Positions 1 to 55,604 of a stretch of 64,000 nucleotides of DNA are shown here, piece by piece; positions within the stretch are counted from its first letter, which is position 1, and each line of letters begins with the position of its first letter. The notes below the pieces were generated by a model. It saw only the letters and a list, made by a program, of their open reading frames with translations, made no database searches and had not been told where the DNA came from. The translations under genes and the position numbers were made by a program. This DNA is from Hydrolagus colliei (Eukaryota): the NCBI GenBank assembly GCA_035084275.1, contig CM068750.1:7440001-7504000 (forward strand). Reading direction: 5' to 3'.

Positions 1-500
1 TTCACTGCCTAGTCCCAGATCTATTTTGGATCAGTAAGAATCCAAGCTATTGGGGTGTTATGGATAGATATGGTGCTGAGGCTTTGTTAGAAGGTAAGCC
101 AGAAGGAACATATCTGCTCAGAGACTCGGCCCAAGAGGACTATCTGTTCTCTGTCAGTTTCAGACGTTATAGCCGCTCCCTCCATGCCAGAATTGAACAA
201 TGGAATTACAATTTCAGTTTTGATGCTCATGATCCCTGTGTCTTTCATGCACCTAGTGTAACTGGTCTCTTGGAGCATTACAAAGACCCAAATTCCTGTA
301 TGTTCTTTGAGCCGCTGCTGTCACTTCCACTGAACAGGACCTTTCCCTTTTCACTTCAGCACCTCTGCAGAGCTGTAATTTGCAGCTACACTACCTATGA
401 TGGCATTCATAGTCTTTCCGTGCCACCAGCAATGAAAAGTTACTTGAAGGAATACCACTACAAACAAAAAGTTCGAGTGTTCAGGTGCGATGAACTGTAG
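1..500 (+). CDS. SOCS4: Suppressor of cytokine signaling 4/5 family, 5'-partial (SH2 + SOCS box), most like SOCS4
   Basis: Frame open from position 3: [66 protein letters not shown]...[12 protein letters not shown]...[22 protein letters not shown], PLLSxPL, LQH and MKxYLKE fit SOCS4 better than SOCS5 as I recall them. M60 is internal. Confidence 0.8.
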
Positions 501-2417
501 TGATAACGTGGATCAGCAGAAAACCAATGGCCTACAATAAATTCAAATTTGTAAAGCACCATAAACATCACTAATCCATAAAGAAATTAGTTAATGTTTG
601 TCTTAAATAGAAGTTTACTGGCACAGTATTTTGATAAGATACTTTTTATGGACTGTTTACTTTAACATTATTCTCTATTGTATTCAAACATTCCCACTTG
701 ATTTCCTTTTCTTTACAGCAGTGCATTTAAAACTGCTTTACTTTGTCAGACAAAATATTTATTTGACTTTTTCTCATGACACTCAGCTCTTATGGTTTTA
801 CCTAAAACAGGACTTTGTCATTTCATCCATCTGAAAACCAAGTGTATTTGCATTTGATCTCAAGATTAAACATTTCTAAAGTCAATTCAAAACATCAAAG
901 AATTGAATGTATAACCATAATTTTATTTGCACTGTTTTTATACTTTTCCAAATGTATTAATCCATAATTTGTAGAGCTCGACAAGTGTAACAAAATACAA
1001 TACGAATGTAACCTGGGTTATTGCACTGTTACTTTCAAATTCATTTTACATGAGTAAAAACTAACAAAATGCTGTTGTTTGAAGTCTGTTTTATACAATA
1101 ATGCAGTTTAGAAATGTATTCTTAACTTTCTAATAACAAATCTAACAATTTAGTATCAACTGATCTCAAAAGAAATAACCAAAGGTTGATTAGAAATCAA
1201 GCCAGAGGATGACAAAAAGACTAACCAGGAACTACATCTGAGCAGCAGGAAATGGTCAGTGGGTCAGAATACTGACCAAATAAAACTTAAAACATATGTG
1301 GAAGGATGCAGCTGAAAAGAAAGGAAATGGAACTGAAGTCTAAATTAGAATATTTAAAGCAAGACAGTAAACAGCTGGAAAGTAGAGAGAATCTTTGTTC
1401 ATTTACAGAGTTAAAGTAAGAAGTCTCATTTTTTTTTGGTCAGGTGAGGGGCGGACACAGAAATGTATCACCATAGTTTTCAAACCGGACAAAATTTACA
1501 TATATGGAAATTTCCCTGTCTGGAATGAAATGCAGTCTCTCCCCAGAGACACACACAGTGCTTATCTTATTCCATAATGTCAAATTTAATAACTCCTTTA
1601 CAAGAAGTTAATTAATAATTTAATAAGTATATTCTTTACTCACTTTGCTTAAAGGATTGTTTGAAATCACATGGGCTCCCAAACAATCTTTTTGTCTCTG
1701 AGGAGTACAATAAACTAGATGTATGCTTCCAAATTTAACATTGGAATTTGTAACTGGATTGCTCAATAAGCAACAAAGACAATAAGGGAATTACTTCGTC
1801 CTGACTCATGGAAACCCACCTTGGAACATAGACGCTGTCAGAGCAGAATTCCCCCCAAGTCATGCTCATATACTTCCGATTTTCTTATTAAAGAATCAAG
1901 TTAGAAAATGGCCACATTCTGATTCCCATTAAAATTTTAGGAAAGTTTCATTGTTAAATACAGCATTGCTAGTATTCAATCAAAAACGATATGTGGCATC
2001 CAGATTGAAAACAAACTACCAACTGACAAATGGAATACACCATGGAAGGCTTACAAAGAGTGCAAGGGGCTGACTCACAAGTGCTCAAATCAAGTTCTTA
2101 TTCAGAAGATTCTGTTTTTGGAGACAATCTATACTTAACTGCTGCAGACCACCCTTGTAAACAAAAGTGCATTACAGGGTGTACTAAATGGATGGTTGTG
2201 CTGAAGTAATGCTACCAATTTTAATAAACAAAACATTGTAACTAACTTAAGTTTGAAGAATTCCATCATTGCACCACCACCACCACACCCATCCCTACCC
2301 CCACATAGAATTATATACAAAAGTCTTTGGTGTAACTTTCCTAAAATGCATAGATACACATTTTTCTACTTTCAACATACAAAAAATGGCTTGACTGAAG
2401 CATTTTTATCATTCATC

Positions 2418-5638: not shown

Positions 5639-6560
5639 ATTCTGATAGGCCCTCACACCACTCTATCAATGAGCAAATGCCACTTAAGAGTAAATATTGA
5701 TTAGATTTTAGTCTGAATGTCAACTTAAAATGATCAATATTATAACTTGGTCTTGATACAAATAGCTATTCCTGTGTGAAGTACGCTATATAAATGCAAG
5801 TTATTGCCTGTTGTATAACAACGTATGATCACCAATTAGCATATGCACACTAAAAGCAGACAAGCTCCATCAGCACACATCATCCTTAAAATTTTGATAG
5901 AGAGCGTCAAAATGAGCAATTGAACCTCCTGTTGTCACACTTCACCTCAAATTACTTTTGAAGATCAACAATGCTATTTGAAATATTCTGACTACGAATG
6001 GAGCGGGATATTTTGGGAAGCAATTCTTAGGGTCCACACTCAAATCATACTTATGACATTGGTTTGCTTACATAACTGACAATCAATAAGCAGCAGAGAT
6101 CACTCAGCAGTGAGGCTTGCTGGAAACATACATTCAATGAAACATGTCCAGTTTGACAAGAAAAATTTACAGGCTTTTGTAAAAGCTATTGAGAGCACTA
6201 AAAGTTGAATCAGCGGCAAAACATTCGGCCTTTCCATTCGATGTTCAATTTGGTACATTTGGTAGTTACAAAATAACTAAAATCATTTATAAAAATGTTA
6301 GCATATCAGATAGCTTTGCCTCGTCCCATTTCCTCTTCGCATCCCATTAATTCAGCACGACTGCTTGGTTTGTTTCAAAGATCTGCTCTCAGCAGGAACA
6401 TGGGATGAAAACTGGTGACGAGCAAGCTAAATGGACTTTGTGAGGTATCAGAGAAGGTAATTGGCAAATCACACCTCACAGAATTTCATGCCATCAAGCA
6501 TAGATTTTTTTTCTTCTGTTTCGCTCAATCACTGCTAAATAAGGCAAATGCTGGTTTTTT

Positions 6561-6688
6561 TCAAGGAAGATTGTGAAGTGGGTTTTCAAAATACAGTGGA
6601 GTGGATTCTGGCAACCTTTGGTGATAATACTTTCTACTTACAAGGAGCAGTATAAACATTTCCAGAATCTTTGCATGGTGATCTATTT
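6561..6688 (-). CDS. OST-alpha-like exon 7 (last coding)
   Basis: tacag|AA ATA GAT: (Q)IDHHAKILEMFILLLVSRKYYHQRLPESTPLYFENPLHNLP*; phase 1 matches exon 6. Confidence 0.88.
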
Positions 6689-9600
6689 CTGTAGATAAAT
6701 GATAGGCAAGTTATTGGAAGGAAATGATAAAAAAAATCTCAAAATATCTGATTGCTGACATAGTAATTAAACAAACTGACATGGATGAGATTATCATCAC
6801 AATGTAGAATTAGCAACAATTTGTATAGCGTTTTTCTTATACAGTGGGAGGACATCTTAAAGTGCTTCACTCAACCGAAAGGGGAAAATAGATGAACATT
6901 GCAGGAATGATTGCCTGGAATTATTTGAACAGGAATAGTTGGGCTGGAGAATATTTATCACATTTATAGAAGTGCAGAATGCAATGCCAGTAATAGGGAC
7001 TGCGGGGAGGTGCCAAGATAAACAACATCCCACATATTTCCTGTTAACTGAGAATGGAACATTCCAGCCTCATCATGTTAAAATACCCTGCCGGCCTTCA
7101 TTGTTCAGGTTCACACCAAGAATGGGGAGTAAATTTGAGCAACCAAAGCATCACGACAAAGCCTAATCCTGTCTTTATCTGACATCTGCATGGGAAAATG
7201 TTCCAGCAAGGATCAATTGATAACAGCCATGGGCAGGACCTCTCTTGGGTTGTAAGGTTTTTTCAACTTTCCCGGTTGAGATCAGCTAATTCAGCACGGC
7301 TGGGGGGAGAATTGTGCTTTAAACCTGCTCTGTTTGGCTCATATTAGTTATGCTCTTTCTCCAGTGAGCTTCAAATCTGTATCTAAATATACTGCTTAAC
7401 AATATTTCAGAGGACAATCCTTATTCAACATTACAATTAGGTGGCAATTGTGTATCCTGCTGAAATCTAGATTCAAATTCTAAGTGTAACTATTGTATTT
7501 TGCTGCATACAAAGGACAATCTGATATCTGTACTGAGAAATTTGATATTGCTACAGTACCACAATACTTACGTAATGCTCTGTTTTTGGAGGAATACAGG
7601 GGTAAGCAAGGAATGACATTGTAAGTTGCAAGACTGCTCAGTATCAGTGGCTGAAGATTGCAAACAATGACGTAGACAATGATAATTGCATATTTAGCCA
7701 CAAGATGATATCCTGTTTCTGCAATGCCAATGGCTGCTTTCAGCAACAAGTTAAATGCATACAAGGATAAAACAGCAGACACATTCAGCAGAATCTTGAT
7801 GTAGAACAAGGGATCATTTAGATGTACCTGGAAAAGGAAGTTTCATTTATTAATATAGCTCAATCTTAAATTTCAAGCCTTGAGGGCCACTTCAGAATTA
7901 TTATCCAACATATATTCATTTATATACAACATATTTTATTATACAACGTATATTAATTCCCAGTACCTTGGGACATCTTCCTGACATGAAAGGCGCCCTT
8001 TTAATGTAATTTTGTTGTTGTTGTTCAGGAAAGTACAATATCTTTTTCTAGAATATATTGTAATTCATAAACTGATTTAAATAAAGTATAGTACATTTTG
8101 GTGTTTCTAAACTACACCATCAGTGAGAAGATACAAAGCCAAATATTTTACTAAATATGAAATAAGTAAAATATAAAGCATTACAAGAATTATATTAAAC
8201 TGGAAAGGATACTAATGATATATATTTTGCCAAAGTTGCACTTTATTCCAGGACCAAATTCAGGTATTCGAGGATCTAGTGGAATTTTAGATAATCATTA
8301 AGATTAGATTGTCAATTTTAGCATAGATTAATCATTCTGTTAGCACCCGAAGGTCATAAAACACAATGTAAACTTAATTTTGCTGAAGCTAGCAAAATTA
8401 AATCTGCTGATATAAATTAACCCCTTCGTGAATGAAATGAATTGCCTGAATTCTTGGATGTGAAAAAAAATACAGACCAGATTCAAAGTTACCTGTCCAT
8501 TATTATATTCGCCATCAGCCCATAGGATGGTAGAGATAAACTGGAGTAAAGGCTGCAGGGTCAATGCCTGCAAGATGCCAATTCGAAGGACTTTGTAAGC
8601 TTTTCTGTGGGACACATATCCCAAATAATGTTAATTATCAGAATTACATTTCTGGATTTACTTTCTAAAGTATCACACACAACCCACATTTCCTCTTTTA
8701 TGTGTTGCATAATTCCAGTCATCTTTATTTAGTTCATTGCTGATAGAATGGAATATCAGACATTGTGTAACAATAAATACTCCTTGCCTTTGATAAAATG
8801 CTTTTTACATCAGCAGGACTTCCTAAAGTGCTTGAATAGATTTACTAAAATGAGGCATAATTATGAAGCTTAAAAAAGCAATTTTATCAGGAGGATTTTT
8901 AGCCAGGACAGACAGAAGAAACTATCTTCTCTTTTTATACAGCACCACAGGATGTTTAACATCCAGTTGAATGTTACCCTGTGTGAAGGGCGCTATATAA
9001 TTGCATGTTGTTGTTGTTGATTAGTAGAAGGGACCTGAATTAAGTCTTTGCTTTGTGAACTACAAAACAAGTTCATTCATATAAAACATTAACCATGAAC
9101 CTGCAAATGTCATATGCAAATATTGTTTTATTCAATATTACATGATTGTACTTATTATCTTCATTTCAAATGATCCCAATGTTTTGTTACTCAGAGTGAA
9201 ATGTGATCCGGATAAATGACTAATATATTAAATATATGCAATTTGTTCTCAATTTTTAACCTTATATTTTATGAGTTTATACTTTTACAATTATTTTACT
9301 TGGTCGGATTCTCACATTTAATAAATAAGTACATAGTTCATCAAGAAAGACATGTAAGACACCAAGTCTTAAAAACCAGACATGCAAAGCATTTTCATAC
9401 AATTTATTGCTCACAGACAAAAAGGATCCTGGACCACTTGATATCTATGGGGAACAGTTTAAGGTAAGAATGACAGGATCAGTTTTATTCCTCTCTACAC
9501 TGTTTTGCTGGTGGCATCTCAATTTATCAGATTCCAAGAGTCCCACACAATGGATGAACTAAGACATCCACAATGAATGATTCATGGTTCACTGGACGTT

Positions 9601-12600
9601 AATTGAGCAAATAGAAAGCAATAAAGAAAAACACCATAGGATATAATAGCTACGTATTACATTGTTAAAAGAAATATGGCAATACTATACCTGCTTATTT
9701 TGACCTTTGGTAGGCAGGTACAACAGCAGCAGCAAGGTCCCAAATTTAATGGTGTATCCACATATTGCAGTTTATCAATAGCTTCAGTGACTCCTCCAAG
9801 GTAAGCAATAGTGAGGTGGAAGAAACCAAACAATGCTAAACTGGCATATCTAAATAGAGAAAGTCAGATTAGACATCAAAAATACATCCCTTATCAATGC
9901 AGTTATGCAAAGCATCTTTAATATACAATACAGTACGAGTAAGTGGAGTCCTGTAGCTCAGTGGTTAGAGGATTCGCCTCACAAGTGAGAGACCTGGGTT
10001 TGATTCCCAGCAGAGCGAAATATTGTGCAAGTTTCCTTACTCCACATGCCTCTGTTTACCTAGCAGTAAGTAGGAACCCAGTTGTTAGTTGATTGGCGGA
10101 ACGCTTTTCCGAGGGTCATAATTCATTTAATTATTCATTTTAATCCATGTCTGTTTGTGGGACACAGCTGTGTGCAATTGTCTGCCATGTTTCACCCACA
10201 AACTGTAGTCAATTCACTTTGCATATATTCTGTGAAGAATATATGACGCGATAAGGCACTATATGCAATGTAAGGATTAATATTATTACTGTATTATTAT
10301 TACGTTACTTACACTGCACTCACAAAGTCCACCAGGATTCCTGCTCTTGGAACAAACATCCCCAACTGATAAGCAACGGTAGTTACCTAAGAAAAAAAAG
10401 AGCAGAATTGTTTTCCTGAGATTGCTTTATCTCCTGTACTTTGTATTTATGTGAAGGTTCATAGAACCACAAACTTAAGCAGTGTTCGGCTGTGATAAAA
10501 ATCACCATGATGCCAACTGAACATCCTGTAAACTATGTCATTAAAGTGCGGGTGGGAGAAAGGAGTAGGAAGCAGTAGAGAAAGGAATCCCTGTACTAAA
10601 ACTACTGTTAGTCAACAACCAAAACAGTTCCACATGTTTAGGCCCTTTACACATAGAAATTTCCTAACATTGAATGGGATGTGCACTCTCTCCCTGTAGG
10701 GATGTATGTTTGTTTACCTAATTCTGGAGAGTGTTAGATACAGTTTGACAAGAGCCAAGATTTGGAGATCCCAGTGTGTGTGTGTGTGTGTGTGAGTGGT
10801 ATGTGTTAGGGTACTATTGGAGTACTAACAGCACATAGTTTGCAATTGAGAGCATAGCCTGGCAAGCCTCCTATCCATTAGGTCTTTGGCTCAACAAATG
10901 AGCTGACCGAGAGTGTACATCATGTAATGAGGTCTGCAATGTATCTTGATGGTTAAATTACAGTAATGGCAATAATAATAATCCTTGCATTTGATATAGC
11001 GCTTTTCATGTCTTCAAGATGTCTCAAAGCGCTTCACAGAATATACTGTAAAGTAAATTGACTGTACAGATGTGGGTGAAATGCAGCAGCCAATTGCGCA
11101 CAGCAGTATCCCACACACAGTCAGGGATTGAGTGACCAAATTATTATAGTTTTTTTTGAATGGTTTATTATTAAGCTTATGGAGTAAGGAAACTTGCCCA
11201 AGGTTTCGCCCTGACCTGCCTGGATTCGAAACACAGGTCTCTCGCTTGTAAGGCGAGTGCTCCAACCACTGAGCTACAGGATTCCACAATACAATACTTA
11301 CAGGAAATAAGGCCAGGACCACCATAGTTTTCTCCTTGATTAAAGTATTCAAGACATTGTTGTTCACATATATCCATAGCTCTATGAAGATGCAATAATT
11401 GGCAATTGCTACAGCATTGAGTACAACCATGACAGCAATTCCATCAGGTGTGAGGTCTAGAGTAAGAAGGGAATAAAAAGATACCAAATTCCTCTCAGTA
11501 TTATTTGAATTTCCATGAAAAGTGGAACATTAGCTGGCATTAGCAGTACAGTGATATCTGATAGTTAGAAATTACAAGGTAACAGTTTGTGATAGGATTT
11601 CACTCTGCCAGTATCTGCATGCATGTGTGTATCAATTGCATACAATTTAGTTCAGGAATTATACCACATTTCCATACAACTGATGCCATCCCTCTTCCCA
11701 ACCAACCTTTCTCTCTCAGGCTTCAAGTGATAAATTACAGCACCAGCTGTGTCTGGAACACTTTAAAATCAGTTCTAATGAAATCAGTTTCCAAGCAGTT
11801 TCTAAACTGACGCAGCCCAGATAACGCAACGTTCATCAAATGCACCTGCCTTTTTACAAACAGCACCCACAGCTCAGACATCTCATACACTCAAGCTGGG
11901 CTTTGGTCAGCCTTCAATGGCAGTAACATGAAACATTCTGAGCCAACTTGCAATATAAAAGTCGCATTGTTTGGGGTGCTCATAGTTTCTCGCTGGCTTG
12001 CCTTTGTCTTTATTTTCTGCTATCCCTGACTGGTTGCAACAGTGTTATTAACTGTGAGCTCCCATCACATCATGCTCAGCTGTTGGCAGAATATTAATGG
12101 CCTTTCACTGCTACAATTCCACGCATCTGACTTTCAGATATGACTTGTAGAGATATCCTCCCGACGAAAGGTGTTGTACAGATGTGATTTTATTGTAGTT
12201 GTTGTTGGAGAATACCCCCCCAGTTTGCCTTGAAGACAAGGCTTTGCAGAAACCTTTGGGGCTTCTTTGCCCCGCCGGTTTCGCTAAACTTCAAGCACAT
12301 GCTGCTCAGTTGACATTTCAACAACAAGAACAAAATTACATTTGTGTAGCGCCTTTCATGTTGGGAGGACATCCTCCAGTTGGTCAGTCAATGCTTTGTA
12401 TGCATTCTTCCCACTGAATTCCTGCTTTTCAATTCAAACTGTAAATATAAAATTGTCCTGCGCCCAAGCTCACAGTCCAGCTGTCTGATCCAAATTGTTG
12501 CACTGTGGATTAGAATTTGCCTTTTGGATGAGACATAAACACACGGTCTGTTTGTAGGTGGAAGTTAAAGATTCCCCGAATCAAAGATTCCATTCCAAAA

Positions 12601-12869
12601 CAGAAAGGACTTCCCCTGTTTGGTCATGCTAGGGCCTGCTTTACAATCCCGTGATAGGAAAGAACAAAATGAAAGAGCAAGCAGATTTTCCTAGATTTAG
12701 TTACCCGCCTTCTCGAACCTGGAAACCTGCTCCCTGCAAGGAAAGCACACAATACGGCATTGAACAAATCTAAGCGAACATTCAGTAATCATTTGCAGTC
12801 ATTCCGTAATGTAACTTTACCTTTAAGCAGGTCAAAAGAGTACGGCAAACTGTCACTGCAGTTGGGCAT
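6561..12869 (-). CDS. Organic solute transporter subunit alpha-like (SLC51A/OST-alpha family), 7 coding exons, 933 nt, 310 aa
   Basis: Exons 12821-12869, 11302-11456, 10313-10386, 9691-9849, 8493-8604, 7572-7827, 6561-6688 join in frame with GT-AG junctions and no internal stop; motifs FVPRA, GPCCCCCTCLP, LQPxIxSxLA, CxPxYSSKxR, ILEMF...RKYY. Confidence 0.9.
7040..7370 (-). mobile_element. Old SINE-like family B copy
   Basis: gagatcagctaattcagcac and cctaatcctgtctttatctgacatc blocks shared with the copies at 4230 and 55150. Confidence 0.5.
7572..7827 (-). CDS. OST-alpha-like exon 6 (256 nt)
   Basis: ccag|GTA...TTA C|gtaagt; VHLNDPLFYIKILLNVSAVLSLYAF...AKYAIIIVYVIVCNLQPLILSSLATYNVIPCLPLYSSKNRAL. 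Confidence 0.92.
8493..8604 (-). CDS. OST-alpha-like exon 5 (112 nt)
   Basis: cacag|A AAA...CAG|gtaact; (R)KAYKVLRIGILQALTLQPLLQFISTILWADGEYNNGQ. Confidence 0.9.
9691..9849 (-). CDS. OST-alpha-like exon 4 (159 nt, poly-Cys motif)
   Basis: ttag|A TAT...AG|gtatag; YASLALFGFFHLTIAYLGGVTEAIDKLQYVDTPLNLGPCCCCCTCLPKVKIS; not in the ORF track. Confidence 0.93.
9944..10288 (+). mobile_element. tRNA-derived SINE family A, long variant
   Basis: A box tagctcagtgg, degenerate B box gtttgattccc, shared 3' body and aaggatta(tta)n tail. Confidence 0.88.
10313..10386 (-). CDS. OST-alpha-like exon 3 (74 nt)
   Basis: ttttcttag|GTA...GT|gtaagt; VTTVAYQLGMFVPRAGILVDFVSA(V). Confidence 0.9.
10774..10794. repeat. 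(TG)n microsatellite
   Basis: gtgtgtgtgtgtgtgtgtgtg read directly. Confidence 0.9.
10971..11286 (-). mobile_element. tRNA-derived SINE family A, full length
   Basis: Minus strand reads tggaatcctgtagctcagtggttggagcactcgccttacaagcgag...ttcgaatcc...atcaaatgcaaggattattatt. Confidence 0.92.
11302..11456 (-). CDS. OST-alpha-like exon 2 (155 nt)
   Basis: ctctag|AC CTC...CCT|gtaagt; (D)LTPDGIAVMVVLNAVAIANYCIFIELWIYVNNNVLNTLIKEKTMVVLALFP. Confidence 0.9.
12460..12625 (+). mobile_element. Degraded Deu-domain (AmnSINE1/SacSINE1-like) fragment
   Basis: gccttttggatgagacataaac...ggtggaagttaaagattccc resembles the Deu-domain core as I recall it. Confidence 0.5.

Positions 12870-19696: not shown

Positions 19697-55604
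<35,908 letters not shown>

What the first reader, a model, noticed from the sequence alone, without database searches (positions are those of the whole stretch)
6561..12869. Hidden intact OST-alpha (SLC51A)-like transporter gene between SOCS4 and ACTN1, probably a divergent paralogue
Seen: seven minus-strand exons (49+155+74+159+112+256+128 = 933 nt) splice GT-AG into an uninterrupted 310-aa hydrophobic protein: MPNCSDSLPYSFDLLKDLTPDGIAV...GMFVPRAG...NLGPCCCCCTCLPK...ILQALTLQPLLQFISTILWADGEY...LQPLILSSLATYNVIPCLPLYSSKNR...ILEMFILLLVSRKYY. Four of the seven exons are absent from the ORF track. Known: OST-alpha is a 7-TM bile acid/steroid-conjugate carrier with a poly-Cys loop, needs OST-beta, and was first cloned from skate liver; human SLC51A is at 3q29 near PCYT1A, not beside ACTN1. 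Inference: this is a second, highly divergent OST-alpha lineage kept in cartilaginous fish, with unknown substrate (bile alcohol sulfates or steroids are candidates) and unknown partner. I saw no OST-beta-like exon in the window.
Basis: partly seen in the sequence, partly recalled or inferred. Interest (0 to 1): 0.85.

Follow-up and report, generated by a model that had tools for sequence, protein, structure and literature searches.

The report
Intact OST-alpha-like transporter gene paralogue
This chimaera-type fish genome carries an intact gene for a membrane carrier related to, but distinct from, the bile-acid exporter subunit OST-alpha; gene-prediction pipelines already list the same gene in many sharks, rays and some bony fishes, but nobody has studied what it does.

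Summary
Seven minus-strand exons (6561-12869) have GT..AG at all six introns. [quoted passage not shown] Exons 4-6 hit Pfam Solute_trans_a in order, and the Cys-cluster motif is present.

The gene is a separate paralogue and not a moved SLC51A:
- A 52-row tree gives three clades, each with support of at least 99.
- An AU test rejects joining the cartilaginous-fish copies to the SLC51A clade (p 3.6e-5).

It is neither "hidden" nor confined to cartilaginous fish. The same ~310-aa gene is annotated in 17 shark, ray, skate and chimaera species. It is also annotated in bichirs, a lungfish and six teleosts. A third clade of about 410-430 aa exists as well.

A model of the Callorhinchus orthologue matches the human OST-alpha cryo-EM structure (TM-score 0.84-0.87). 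Several groove and tunnel residues differ from the human protein.

No RNA run was available, dN/dS could not be computed, and the tool needed for synteny was closed. My paper searches found no description of this clade. The joined exon model was never searched.

Verdict: an ordinary, intact member of a known family; its substrate and partner are unknown.

The parts
12821..12869 (-). Exon 1 (49 nt): start codon at 12869-12867, 16 codons plus 1 base.
   Evidence: 11 of 16 residues identical to P0042 residues 1-16. GT donor at 12820.
11302..11456 (-). Exon 2 (155 nt): first long helix region.
   Evidence: 41 of 51 residues identical to P0042 18-68. AG acceptor, GTAAGT donor. No Pfam hit on its own.
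10313..10386 (-). Exon 3 (74 nt): holds the family-invariant Pro-Arg pair.
   Evidence: 23 of 24 residues identical to P0042 69-92.
9691..9849 (-). Exon 4 (159 nt): holds the Cys cluster GPCCCCCTC in the TM3-TM4 loop.
   Evidence: PF03619 positions 70-112, E 0.026. (human OST-alpha 138-171, E 0.0063). (49 of 52 residues identical to P0042 94-145).
8493..8604 (-). Exon 5 (112 nt).
   Evidence: PF03619 positions 121-156, E 5.5e-4. (33 of 37 residues identical to P0042 147-183).
7572..7827 (-). Exon 6 (256 nt): corresponds to the TM5-TM6 region that forms the substrate groove in human OST-alpha.
   Evidence: PF03619 positions 163-238, 34.4 bits, cut-off 24.9. (human OST-alpha 219-294, E 2.6e-6). 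(77 of 85 residues identical). (sister of Callorhinchus, support 100/97).
6561..6688 (-). Exon 7 (128 nt including the stop at 6561-6563): last helix and C-terminal tail.
   Evidence: 38 of 41 residues identical to P0042 270-310. AG acceptor. No Pfam hit on its own.
6636..6641 (-). GTAAGT inside exon 7; a possible alternative donor at the point where the Callorhinchus RefSeq isoform P0269 departs from V9L032.
   Evidence: the two proteins share 284 residues and then diverge. Use of this donor is not shown.
798..830 (-). Possible alternative last exon, antisense just beyond the SOCS4 stop. It has an AG acceptor, then 10 codons and a stop.
   Evidence: It matches the alternative tail of P0269 in 7 of 7 residues and then, in another reading frame, in 16 of 18. 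Read in frame it therefore stops early in this genome. Use of this exon is not shown.

Best explanation
[quoted passage not shown] It is one of at least three old paralogues of the OST-alpha subunit. Clade A is SLC51A proper. Clade B is a form of about 410-430 aa with a long tail. Shown: the gene is intact, it is colinear with its orthologues, and it keeps the residues that never vary in the family. Its orthologue is predicted to adopt the OST-alpha seven-helix fold. Inferred: it works as human OST-alpha is described to work. In that description a palmitoylated Cys-rich loop between TM3 and TM4 packs against TM5 and TM6 and shapes a groove open to the inner membrane leaflet. An amphipathic sterol-type solute enters the groove and leaves through a polar tunnel by facilitated diffusion. 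Several groove and tunnel positions differ from the human protein, so the preferred solute probably differs. Whether it needs an OST-beta-like partner is unknown.
For: Exon structure and ungapped colinearity with P0042, 272 of 306 residues identical. PF03619 hits of exons 4, 5 and 6 fall in profile order, and exon 6 is above the curated cut-off. Exons 4 and 6 match human OST-alpha residues 138-171 and 219-294. In the search with P0003, 25 of the 120 listed rows score 300-699 bits and are named OST-alpha-like. The other 95 score 145 bits or less. In the tree, clade A has support 100/100, clade B 100/100 and clade C plus window exon 6 100/99. Exon 6 is sister to Callorhinchus (100/97), and clade C splits into cartilaginous fish (98/92) and bony fish (96/81). 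The AU test rejects cartilaginous-fish clade C plus clade A as one clade (lnL difference 29.75, p 3.6e-5). Thirteen species have both a clade C and a clade B protein, and Polymixia has both C and A. The window keeps 8 of 8 invariant family residues. It departs at only 2 of 156 positions that are invariant in ten cartilaginous-fish orthologues; the ten proteins themselves range from 0 to 21. The model of P0042 has pLDDT 82.5 and matches 9ljg_A, 9uo2_A and 9unv_A at TM-score 0.84-0.87, while the next fold scores 0.41. The mechanism is taken from PMC13346981, which I read in full.
Against: There is no RNA evidence for this species. The one run found is DNA-like and lies over introns as well as exons. 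Exons 2, 3 and 7 give no Pfam hit on their own, and exon 1 is too short to search. Fold and full-length comparisons were done on the Callorhinchus orthologue, not on this genome's protein. Clade A is represented in the tree by teleosts only and is tied to human SLC51A only through bit scores. I named the AU test group after seeing the tree. No clade A or clade B protein of a chimaera appeared in my lists, so a second copy in this lineage is not shown. Of the three described substrate contacts, R241, R244 and Q260 correspond to K, A and I here. Teleost clade A also differs at the first two, so these positions say little about function.
Confidence: 0.85

Rival explanations
1. It is the canonical SLC51A orthologue, simply moved next to SOCS4 and ACTN1 in cartilaginous fish, and it evolves fast.
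For: It has the same Pfam family, the same fold and the same Cys cluster. I could not show a separate SLC51A in a chimaera.
Against: Clade C includes bony fishes. One of them, Polymixia, also has a clade A protein. The AU test rejects joining the cartilaginous-fish copies to clade A. Human OST-alpha scores 122 bits against P0042 but 233 bits against a teleost clade A protein. A paper passage gives 41% identity between skate and human OST-alpha (PMC5942847). The structural alignment of P0042 with the human protein gives 26-27%.
Confidence: 0.03
2. In this species it is a recently silenced or unexpressed relic that only looks intact.
For: There is no RNA run and no dN/dS. The possible alternative last exon is out of frame relative to Callorhinchus.
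Against: All seven exons are open and all 12 splice dinucleotides are intact. The window keeps 8 of 8 invariant residues, and only 2 conservative changes fall at 156 clade-invariant positions. Of the 34 differences from Callorhinchus, 23 have a BLOSUM62 score of 0 or more.
Confidence: 0.07
3. It belongs to the TMEM184 side of the Solute_trans_a superfamily and not to the OST-alpha side.
For: PF03619 covers both groups. I had no TMEM184 sequence for the tree.
Against: Every named relative is called OST-alpha or OST-alpha-like. The only matches among solved structures are OST-alpha. The Cys cluster of the TM3-TM4 loop is present in every aligned row that is not gapped there, 32 of the 33 OST-alpha-type sequences of A1.
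Confidence: 0.02

Closest known systems
[quoted passage not shown]
   Same: Same length. Ungapped colinearity exon by exon. 89% identical to Callorhinchus, 73-75% to a ray and a shark, and 53% to reedfish and lungfish. Same clade in the tree.
   Different: Nothing structural. It is the same gene in another species. The names are pipeline labels; my paper searches found no study of this clade.
SLC51A / OST-alpha (human structures 9ljg, 9uo2, 9unv)
   Same: Solute_trans_a domain. Predicted fold at TM-score 0.84-0.87. Cys cluster in the TM3-TM4 loop with 6 of the 7 human cysteines. An acidic residue at the position of gate residue E116. Invariant Pro-Arg, Trp, Gln, Arg, Glu and Phe positions.
   Different: Separate clade. 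26-27% identity. About 30 residues shorter at the N-terminus. W234 corresponds to Y, K191 to Q, P209 to N, R244 to A and Q260 to I. Different neighbouring genes. Dependence on OST-beta is unknown.
Long-tailed OST-alpha paralogue, about 410-430 aa ('si:dkey-16n15.6'; clade B)
   Same: An old vertebrate OST-alpha paralogue with the same domain and Cys cluster. It occurs in the same shark, ray, lungfish and bichir species as clade C.
   Different: Separate clade with support 100/100. It has a long C-terminal tail. It is retained in amphibians, reptiles and platypus, where no clade C protein appeared in my lists.

Membership tests
Solute_trans_a (PF03619; OST-alpha/TMEM184 superfamily) | Significant match to the Pfam model | tested here: met
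   Exon 6 alone scores 34.4 bits against a cut-off of 24.9. Exons 4 and 5 hit below the cut-off but in profile order. The orthologue P0042 scores 116.5 bits over profile positions 7-263 of 267.
OST-alpha type | Seven-helix OST-alpha fold | tested here: met
   Tested on the Callorhinchus orthologue only, because the joined model was not used. pLDDT 82.5 and pTM 0.78. TM-score 0.84-0.87 to human OST-alpha, with the next fold at 0.41.
OST-alpha type | Cys-rich motif in the TM3-TM4 loop (palmitoylated in human) | tested here: met
   GPCCCCCTC in exon 4 aligns with 6 of the 7 human cysteines. Palmitoylation itself cannot be tested here.
OST-alpha type | Substrate contacts R241, R244 and Q260 of the human protein | tested here: inconclusive
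   These positions are K, A and I in the window and in P0042. Teleost SLC51A in alignment A1 also lacks the two arginines, so they do not define the family. The residue list comes from PMC13346981.
OST-alpha type | Needs OST-beta for trafficking and transport | not testable with these tools
   No OST-beta search of the window was possible. Translations that run through stops are not accepted by the tools.
SLC51A orthologue (clade A) | Groups with SLC51A in a tree | tested here: not met
   Clade A 100/100 and clade C 100/99 are separate. AU p 3.6e-5 against cartilaginous-fish clade C plus clade A. Bit scores against the human protein are 122 versus 233.
SLC51A orthologue (clade A) | Conserved neighbourhood (PCYT1A; recalled, not from a call) | tested here: not met
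   The neighbours in the window are a SOCS4-like exon (281 bits to 2izv) and an alpha-actinin gene. No long ORF in between hits Pfam.
Clade C 'OST-alpha-like' (about 310 aa) | Full-length colinearity and tree placement with the 310-aa proteins | tested here: met
TMEM184 | Groups with TMEM184A, B or C | not tested

The most novel reading that the evidence does not exclude
The jawed-vertebrate ancestor had at least three OST-alpha genes, although the SLC51 family is described as having only SLC51A and SLC51B. Clade C was lost in tetrapods and most teleosts. It encodes a carrier whose altered groove and tunnel (Y for W234, I for Q260, Q for K191, A for R244) suit a different solute. That solute could be bile alcohol sulfates or less anionic sterols, perhaps carried without OST-beta.
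Probability: 0.15. Interest if true: 0.6.

Novelty: new member of a known kind. Interest (0 to 1): 0.3.

Why it matters
[quoted passage not shown] Sequence databases nevertheless hold two further OST-alpha clades that are old and well conserved. The one found here survives in cartilaginous fishes, bichirs, lungfish and a few teleosts. With human OST-alpha/beta structures now solved, these natural variants of the substrate groove could help show what sets substrate choice and dependence on a partner subunit. For this genome the practical result is one gene model to add to the annotation.

Tried and rejected
NCBIfam scan of the six searchable exons gave only chance-level hits to bacterial models. 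Exon 2 against solved structures gave only a chance hit to adenylosuccinate lyase, E 0.2.

The look-up of sequencing runs (kind rna) gave one run, which is not on record as RNA. Laid on 6550-12549, its contigs cover introns and exons alike, so it says nothing about expression.

The search for homologous proteins with P0042 returned only 19 rows, all clade C, and so gave no view of a chimaera SLC51A or clade B copy. The ESM Atlas returned only general PF03619 clusters. Six long ORFs elsewhere in the window had no Pfam family.

Eight counted paper searches found no description of this paralogue. The phrase 'transporter subunit alpha-like' occurs in 5 papers. The one I opened, PMC7011509, has it only as a table row for birds. 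The library lacks most subscription journals, and I did not see the two Nature structure papers themselves. Supplements were not consulted.

I considered and dropped the translocation, pseudogene and TMEM184 readings; see the rival explanations.
Full report
**Observation**

Their limits are:

| Exon | Coordinates | Length (nt) |
|---|---|---|
| E1 | 12821-12869 | 49 |
| E2 | 11302-11456 | 155 |
| E3 | 10313-10386 | 74 |
| E4 | 9691-9849 | 159 |
| E5 | 8493-8604 | 112 |
| E6 | 7572-7827 | 256 |
| E7 | 6561-6688 | 128 |

A script confirmed these lengths, which sum to 933 nt. It also confirmed a GT donor and an AG acceptor with a pyrimidine-rich tract at all six introns, and that none of the seven in-frame translations contains a stop.

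I did not concatenate the exons, and no search, fold or tree used a joined sequence.

**Family**

- Pfam: of the six exons long enough to search, three hit Solute_trans_a (PF03619), in the order of the profile. Exon 4 hits positions 70-112 (E 0.026). Exon 5 hits 121-156 (E 5.5e-4). Exon 6 hits 163-238 (E 1.9e-8, 34.4 bits against a cut-off of 24.9). Exons 2, 3 and 7 hit nothing.
- Solved structures: exon 6 matches human OST-alpha residues 219-294 (E 2.6e-6). Exon 4 matches residues 138-171, including the Cys cluster (E 0.0063). Exon 2 gave only a chance hit.
- NCBIfam gave nothing relevant.

**Orthologues**

A HMMER search of 1.84 billion representatives with exon 6 found 23 proteins at E of 0.001 or better. 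Among them was a 313-aa protein, P0003, at 47% identity. [quoted passage not shown]

Searching with P0003 listed 120 rows:
- 25 rows score 300-699 bits, are almost all about 310 aa long, and carry that same name. 16 are sharks, rays, a skate and the chimaera Callorhinchus. The rest are Erpetoichthys, Protopterus, Polymixia, Lampris, Lota, Arctogadus, Lepidogalaxias, Centroberyx and one unnamed Logan contig.
- The other 95 rows score 145 bits or less. They are ordinary fish OST-alpha plus one brachiopod.

Cluster look-ups add Polypterus and Amblyraja. They also give the Callorhinchus accessions, V9L032 and XP_007886317.

**Exon-by-exon comparison**

Each exon aligns without gaps, end to end, to consecutive pieces of the 310-aa Callorhinchus protein P0042:

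| Exon | P0042 residues | Identical |
|---|---|---|
| E1 | 1-16 | 11 of 16 |
| E2 | 18-68 | 41 of 51 |
| E3 | 69-92 | 23 of 24 |
| E4 | 94-145 | 49 of 52 |
| E5 | 147-183 | 33 of 37 |
| E6 | 184-268 | 77 of 85 |
| E7 | 270-310 | 38 of 41 |

In all, 272 of 306 residues are identical. One residue is left at each of the four split codons.

Identity falls with distance: 230 of 306 to a sawfish, 224 of 306 to a catshark, 163 to a lungfish and 162 to the reedfish. It is 75 to a salmonid SLC51A, 84 to a shark clade B protein and 79 to Lingula.

**Is the gene decaying?**

- Across alignment A1 (33 sequences of all clades), eight columns never vary. The window has the family residue at 8 of 8. It equals P0042 at 22 of 22 nearly invariant columns.
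- 156 of the positions that are invariant in ten 310-aa cartilaginous-fish orthologues are covered by the exon translations. The window departs at 2 of them (G to A, L to V). The same leave-one-out count for the ten proteins ranges from 0 to 21.
- Of the 34 differences from Callorhinchus, 23 have a BLOSUM62 score of 0 or more.

**Paralogue or moved orthologue?**

Human OST-alpha (9ljg_A) scores 233 bits against a salmonid OST-alpha. It scores 122 bits against P0042 and 108 bits against a shark protein of a third group.

That third group, clade B, is about 410-430 aa long and is named si:dkey-16n15.6 in some fish. It occurs in sharks, rays, coelacanth, lungfish, amphibians, reptiles, platypus and ray-finned fishes.

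The maximum-likelihood tree has 52 rows: 18 clade C, 12 clade A (all teleosts), 20 clade B, Lingula, and window exon 6 as its own row.
- Clade A has support 100/100, clade B 100/100, and clade C with the window 100/99.
- Exon 6 is sister to Callorhinchus (100/97).
- Clade C divides into cartilaginous fishes (98/92) and bony fishes (96/81).
- The order in which the three clades branch is unresolved, and the tool warns that long branches meet there.

An AU test rejects a tree in which the cartilaginous-fish clade C rows and the window join clade A (lnL lower by 29.75, p 3.6e-5). I named that group after seeing the tree.

Thirteen species have both a clade C and a clade B protein in my lists, and Polymixia has both C and A. 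The duplication is therefore older than the split between cartilaginous and bony fishes.

No clade A or clade B protein of a chimaera appeared. The lists are cut at 120 rows and depend on shared words, so this absence says nothing.

A paper passage gives 41% identity between skate and human OST-alpha (PMC5942847). The structural alignment of P0042 with the human protein gives 26-27%. This suggests, by inference only, that the classic skate gene is clade A.

**Fold and mechanism**

AlphaFold2 on A1, with P0042 as first sequence, gave pLDDT 82.5 and pTM 0.78. Foldseek against solved structures put the three human OST-alpha entries first, with TM-scores 0.84-0.87, rmsd 2.4-2.6 Å and E as low as 6.7e-15. 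The next hit, a GPCR, scores 0.41.

I read the commentary PMC13346981 in full. It describes human OST-alpha/beta as follows:
- A palmitoylated seven-Cys loop packs on TM5 and TM6.
- A lateral groove holds the substrate contacts R241, R244 and Q260.
- Palmitoylated C161 contacts W234.
- A tunnel is gated by P209 and E116 and holds K191.

Through the alignment and alignment A1, the window shows the following at those positions:

| Human residue | Window residue |
|---|---|
| Seven cysteines of the loop | 6 of 7 are Cys |
| E116 | D |
| W234 | Y |
| K191 | Q |
| P209 | N |
| R241 | K |
| R244 | A |
| Q260 | I |

Teleost SLC51A also lacks the two arginines in A1, so those two positions are weak markers. 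W234, K191 and Q260 do separate clade A from clade C. The step from these differences to a different substrate is inference.

**Surroundings**

- The ORF at 60-500 (+) matches human SOCS4 at 281 bits, and the next best SOCS protein scores 53 bits. SOCS5 is not among the solved structures, so it cannot be excluded.
- An exon at 25658-25813 (-) matches an "actinin" entry, 1sjj, at 95 bits, against 78 bits for alpha-actinin-2. Another note of this scan reads ACTN1 exons at 42907-43328.
- The OST-alpha-like gene and SOCS4 lie tail to tail.

**Expression**

Only one run holds this DNA, and it is not on record as RNA. Its contigs tile introns and exons of 6550-12549, with 0 differences from the window inside exons 2-7. 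Expression in this species is therefore untested.

Indirect hints, neither of which proves expression:
- The Logan contig that encodes P0028 is 1669 nt long and carries an uninterrupted 316-aa reading frame.
- From memory, UniProt V9 entries of Callorhinchus come from cDNA. No call checked this.

**Literature**

Eight counted searches found no description of this paralogue. One commentary calls SLC51A and SLC51B the only known members of the family (PMC5924743, passage seen). I did not see the two Nature structure papers or any supplements, and they may contain a phylogeny.

**Verdict**

The reading "divergent paralogue" is right. "Hidden" and "kept in cartilaginous fish" are not, because the gene is already annotated in about 26 named species. 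What is new is only this genome's copy, plus the point that the literature I could search does not mention the clade.

Noticed in passing
window 6636-6641 (-) and 798-830 (-): Exon 7 holds an internal GTAAGT exactly where the Callorhinchus RefSeq isoform (P0269, 311 aa) leaves V9L032. That isoform's alternative tail has a match 5.7 kb further on, behind an AG acceptor at 831-832. The match lies antisense just past the SOCS4 stop. In this genome a one-base difference makes the tail stop after 10 codons. The conservation may simply reflect the SOCS4 3' UTR.
   Followed up: partly
window 9947-10018 (+) and 11211-11283 (-): Two tRNA-Val-like elements lie in introns 3 and 2. The bins around them reach summed contig depths of 1 to 9 million in the laid run, against about 50-100 elsewhere. 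They look like heads of a very abundant tRNA-derived SINE.
   Followed up: partly
proteins P0148, P0158, P0160, P0219 and others (not in the window): A third OST-alpha clade of about 410-430 aa with a long C-terminal tail is annotated from sharks to amphibians, reptiles and platypus. The databases name it variously 'alpha' or 'alpha-like'. A paper search for its zebrafish-style name found nothing.
   Followed up: partly
window 7950-8149 and 12150-12549: Two further intronic stretches have summed contig depths of about 46,000 to 95,000 in the laid run, and many contigs join them to the SINE regions. These are other repeat families that I did not identify.
   Followed up: no
window 60-500 (+): The last coding exon of a SOCS4-like gene (SH2 domain and SOCS box) matches human SOCS4 at 281 bits. 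The gene is cut by the start of the window.
   Followed up: partly
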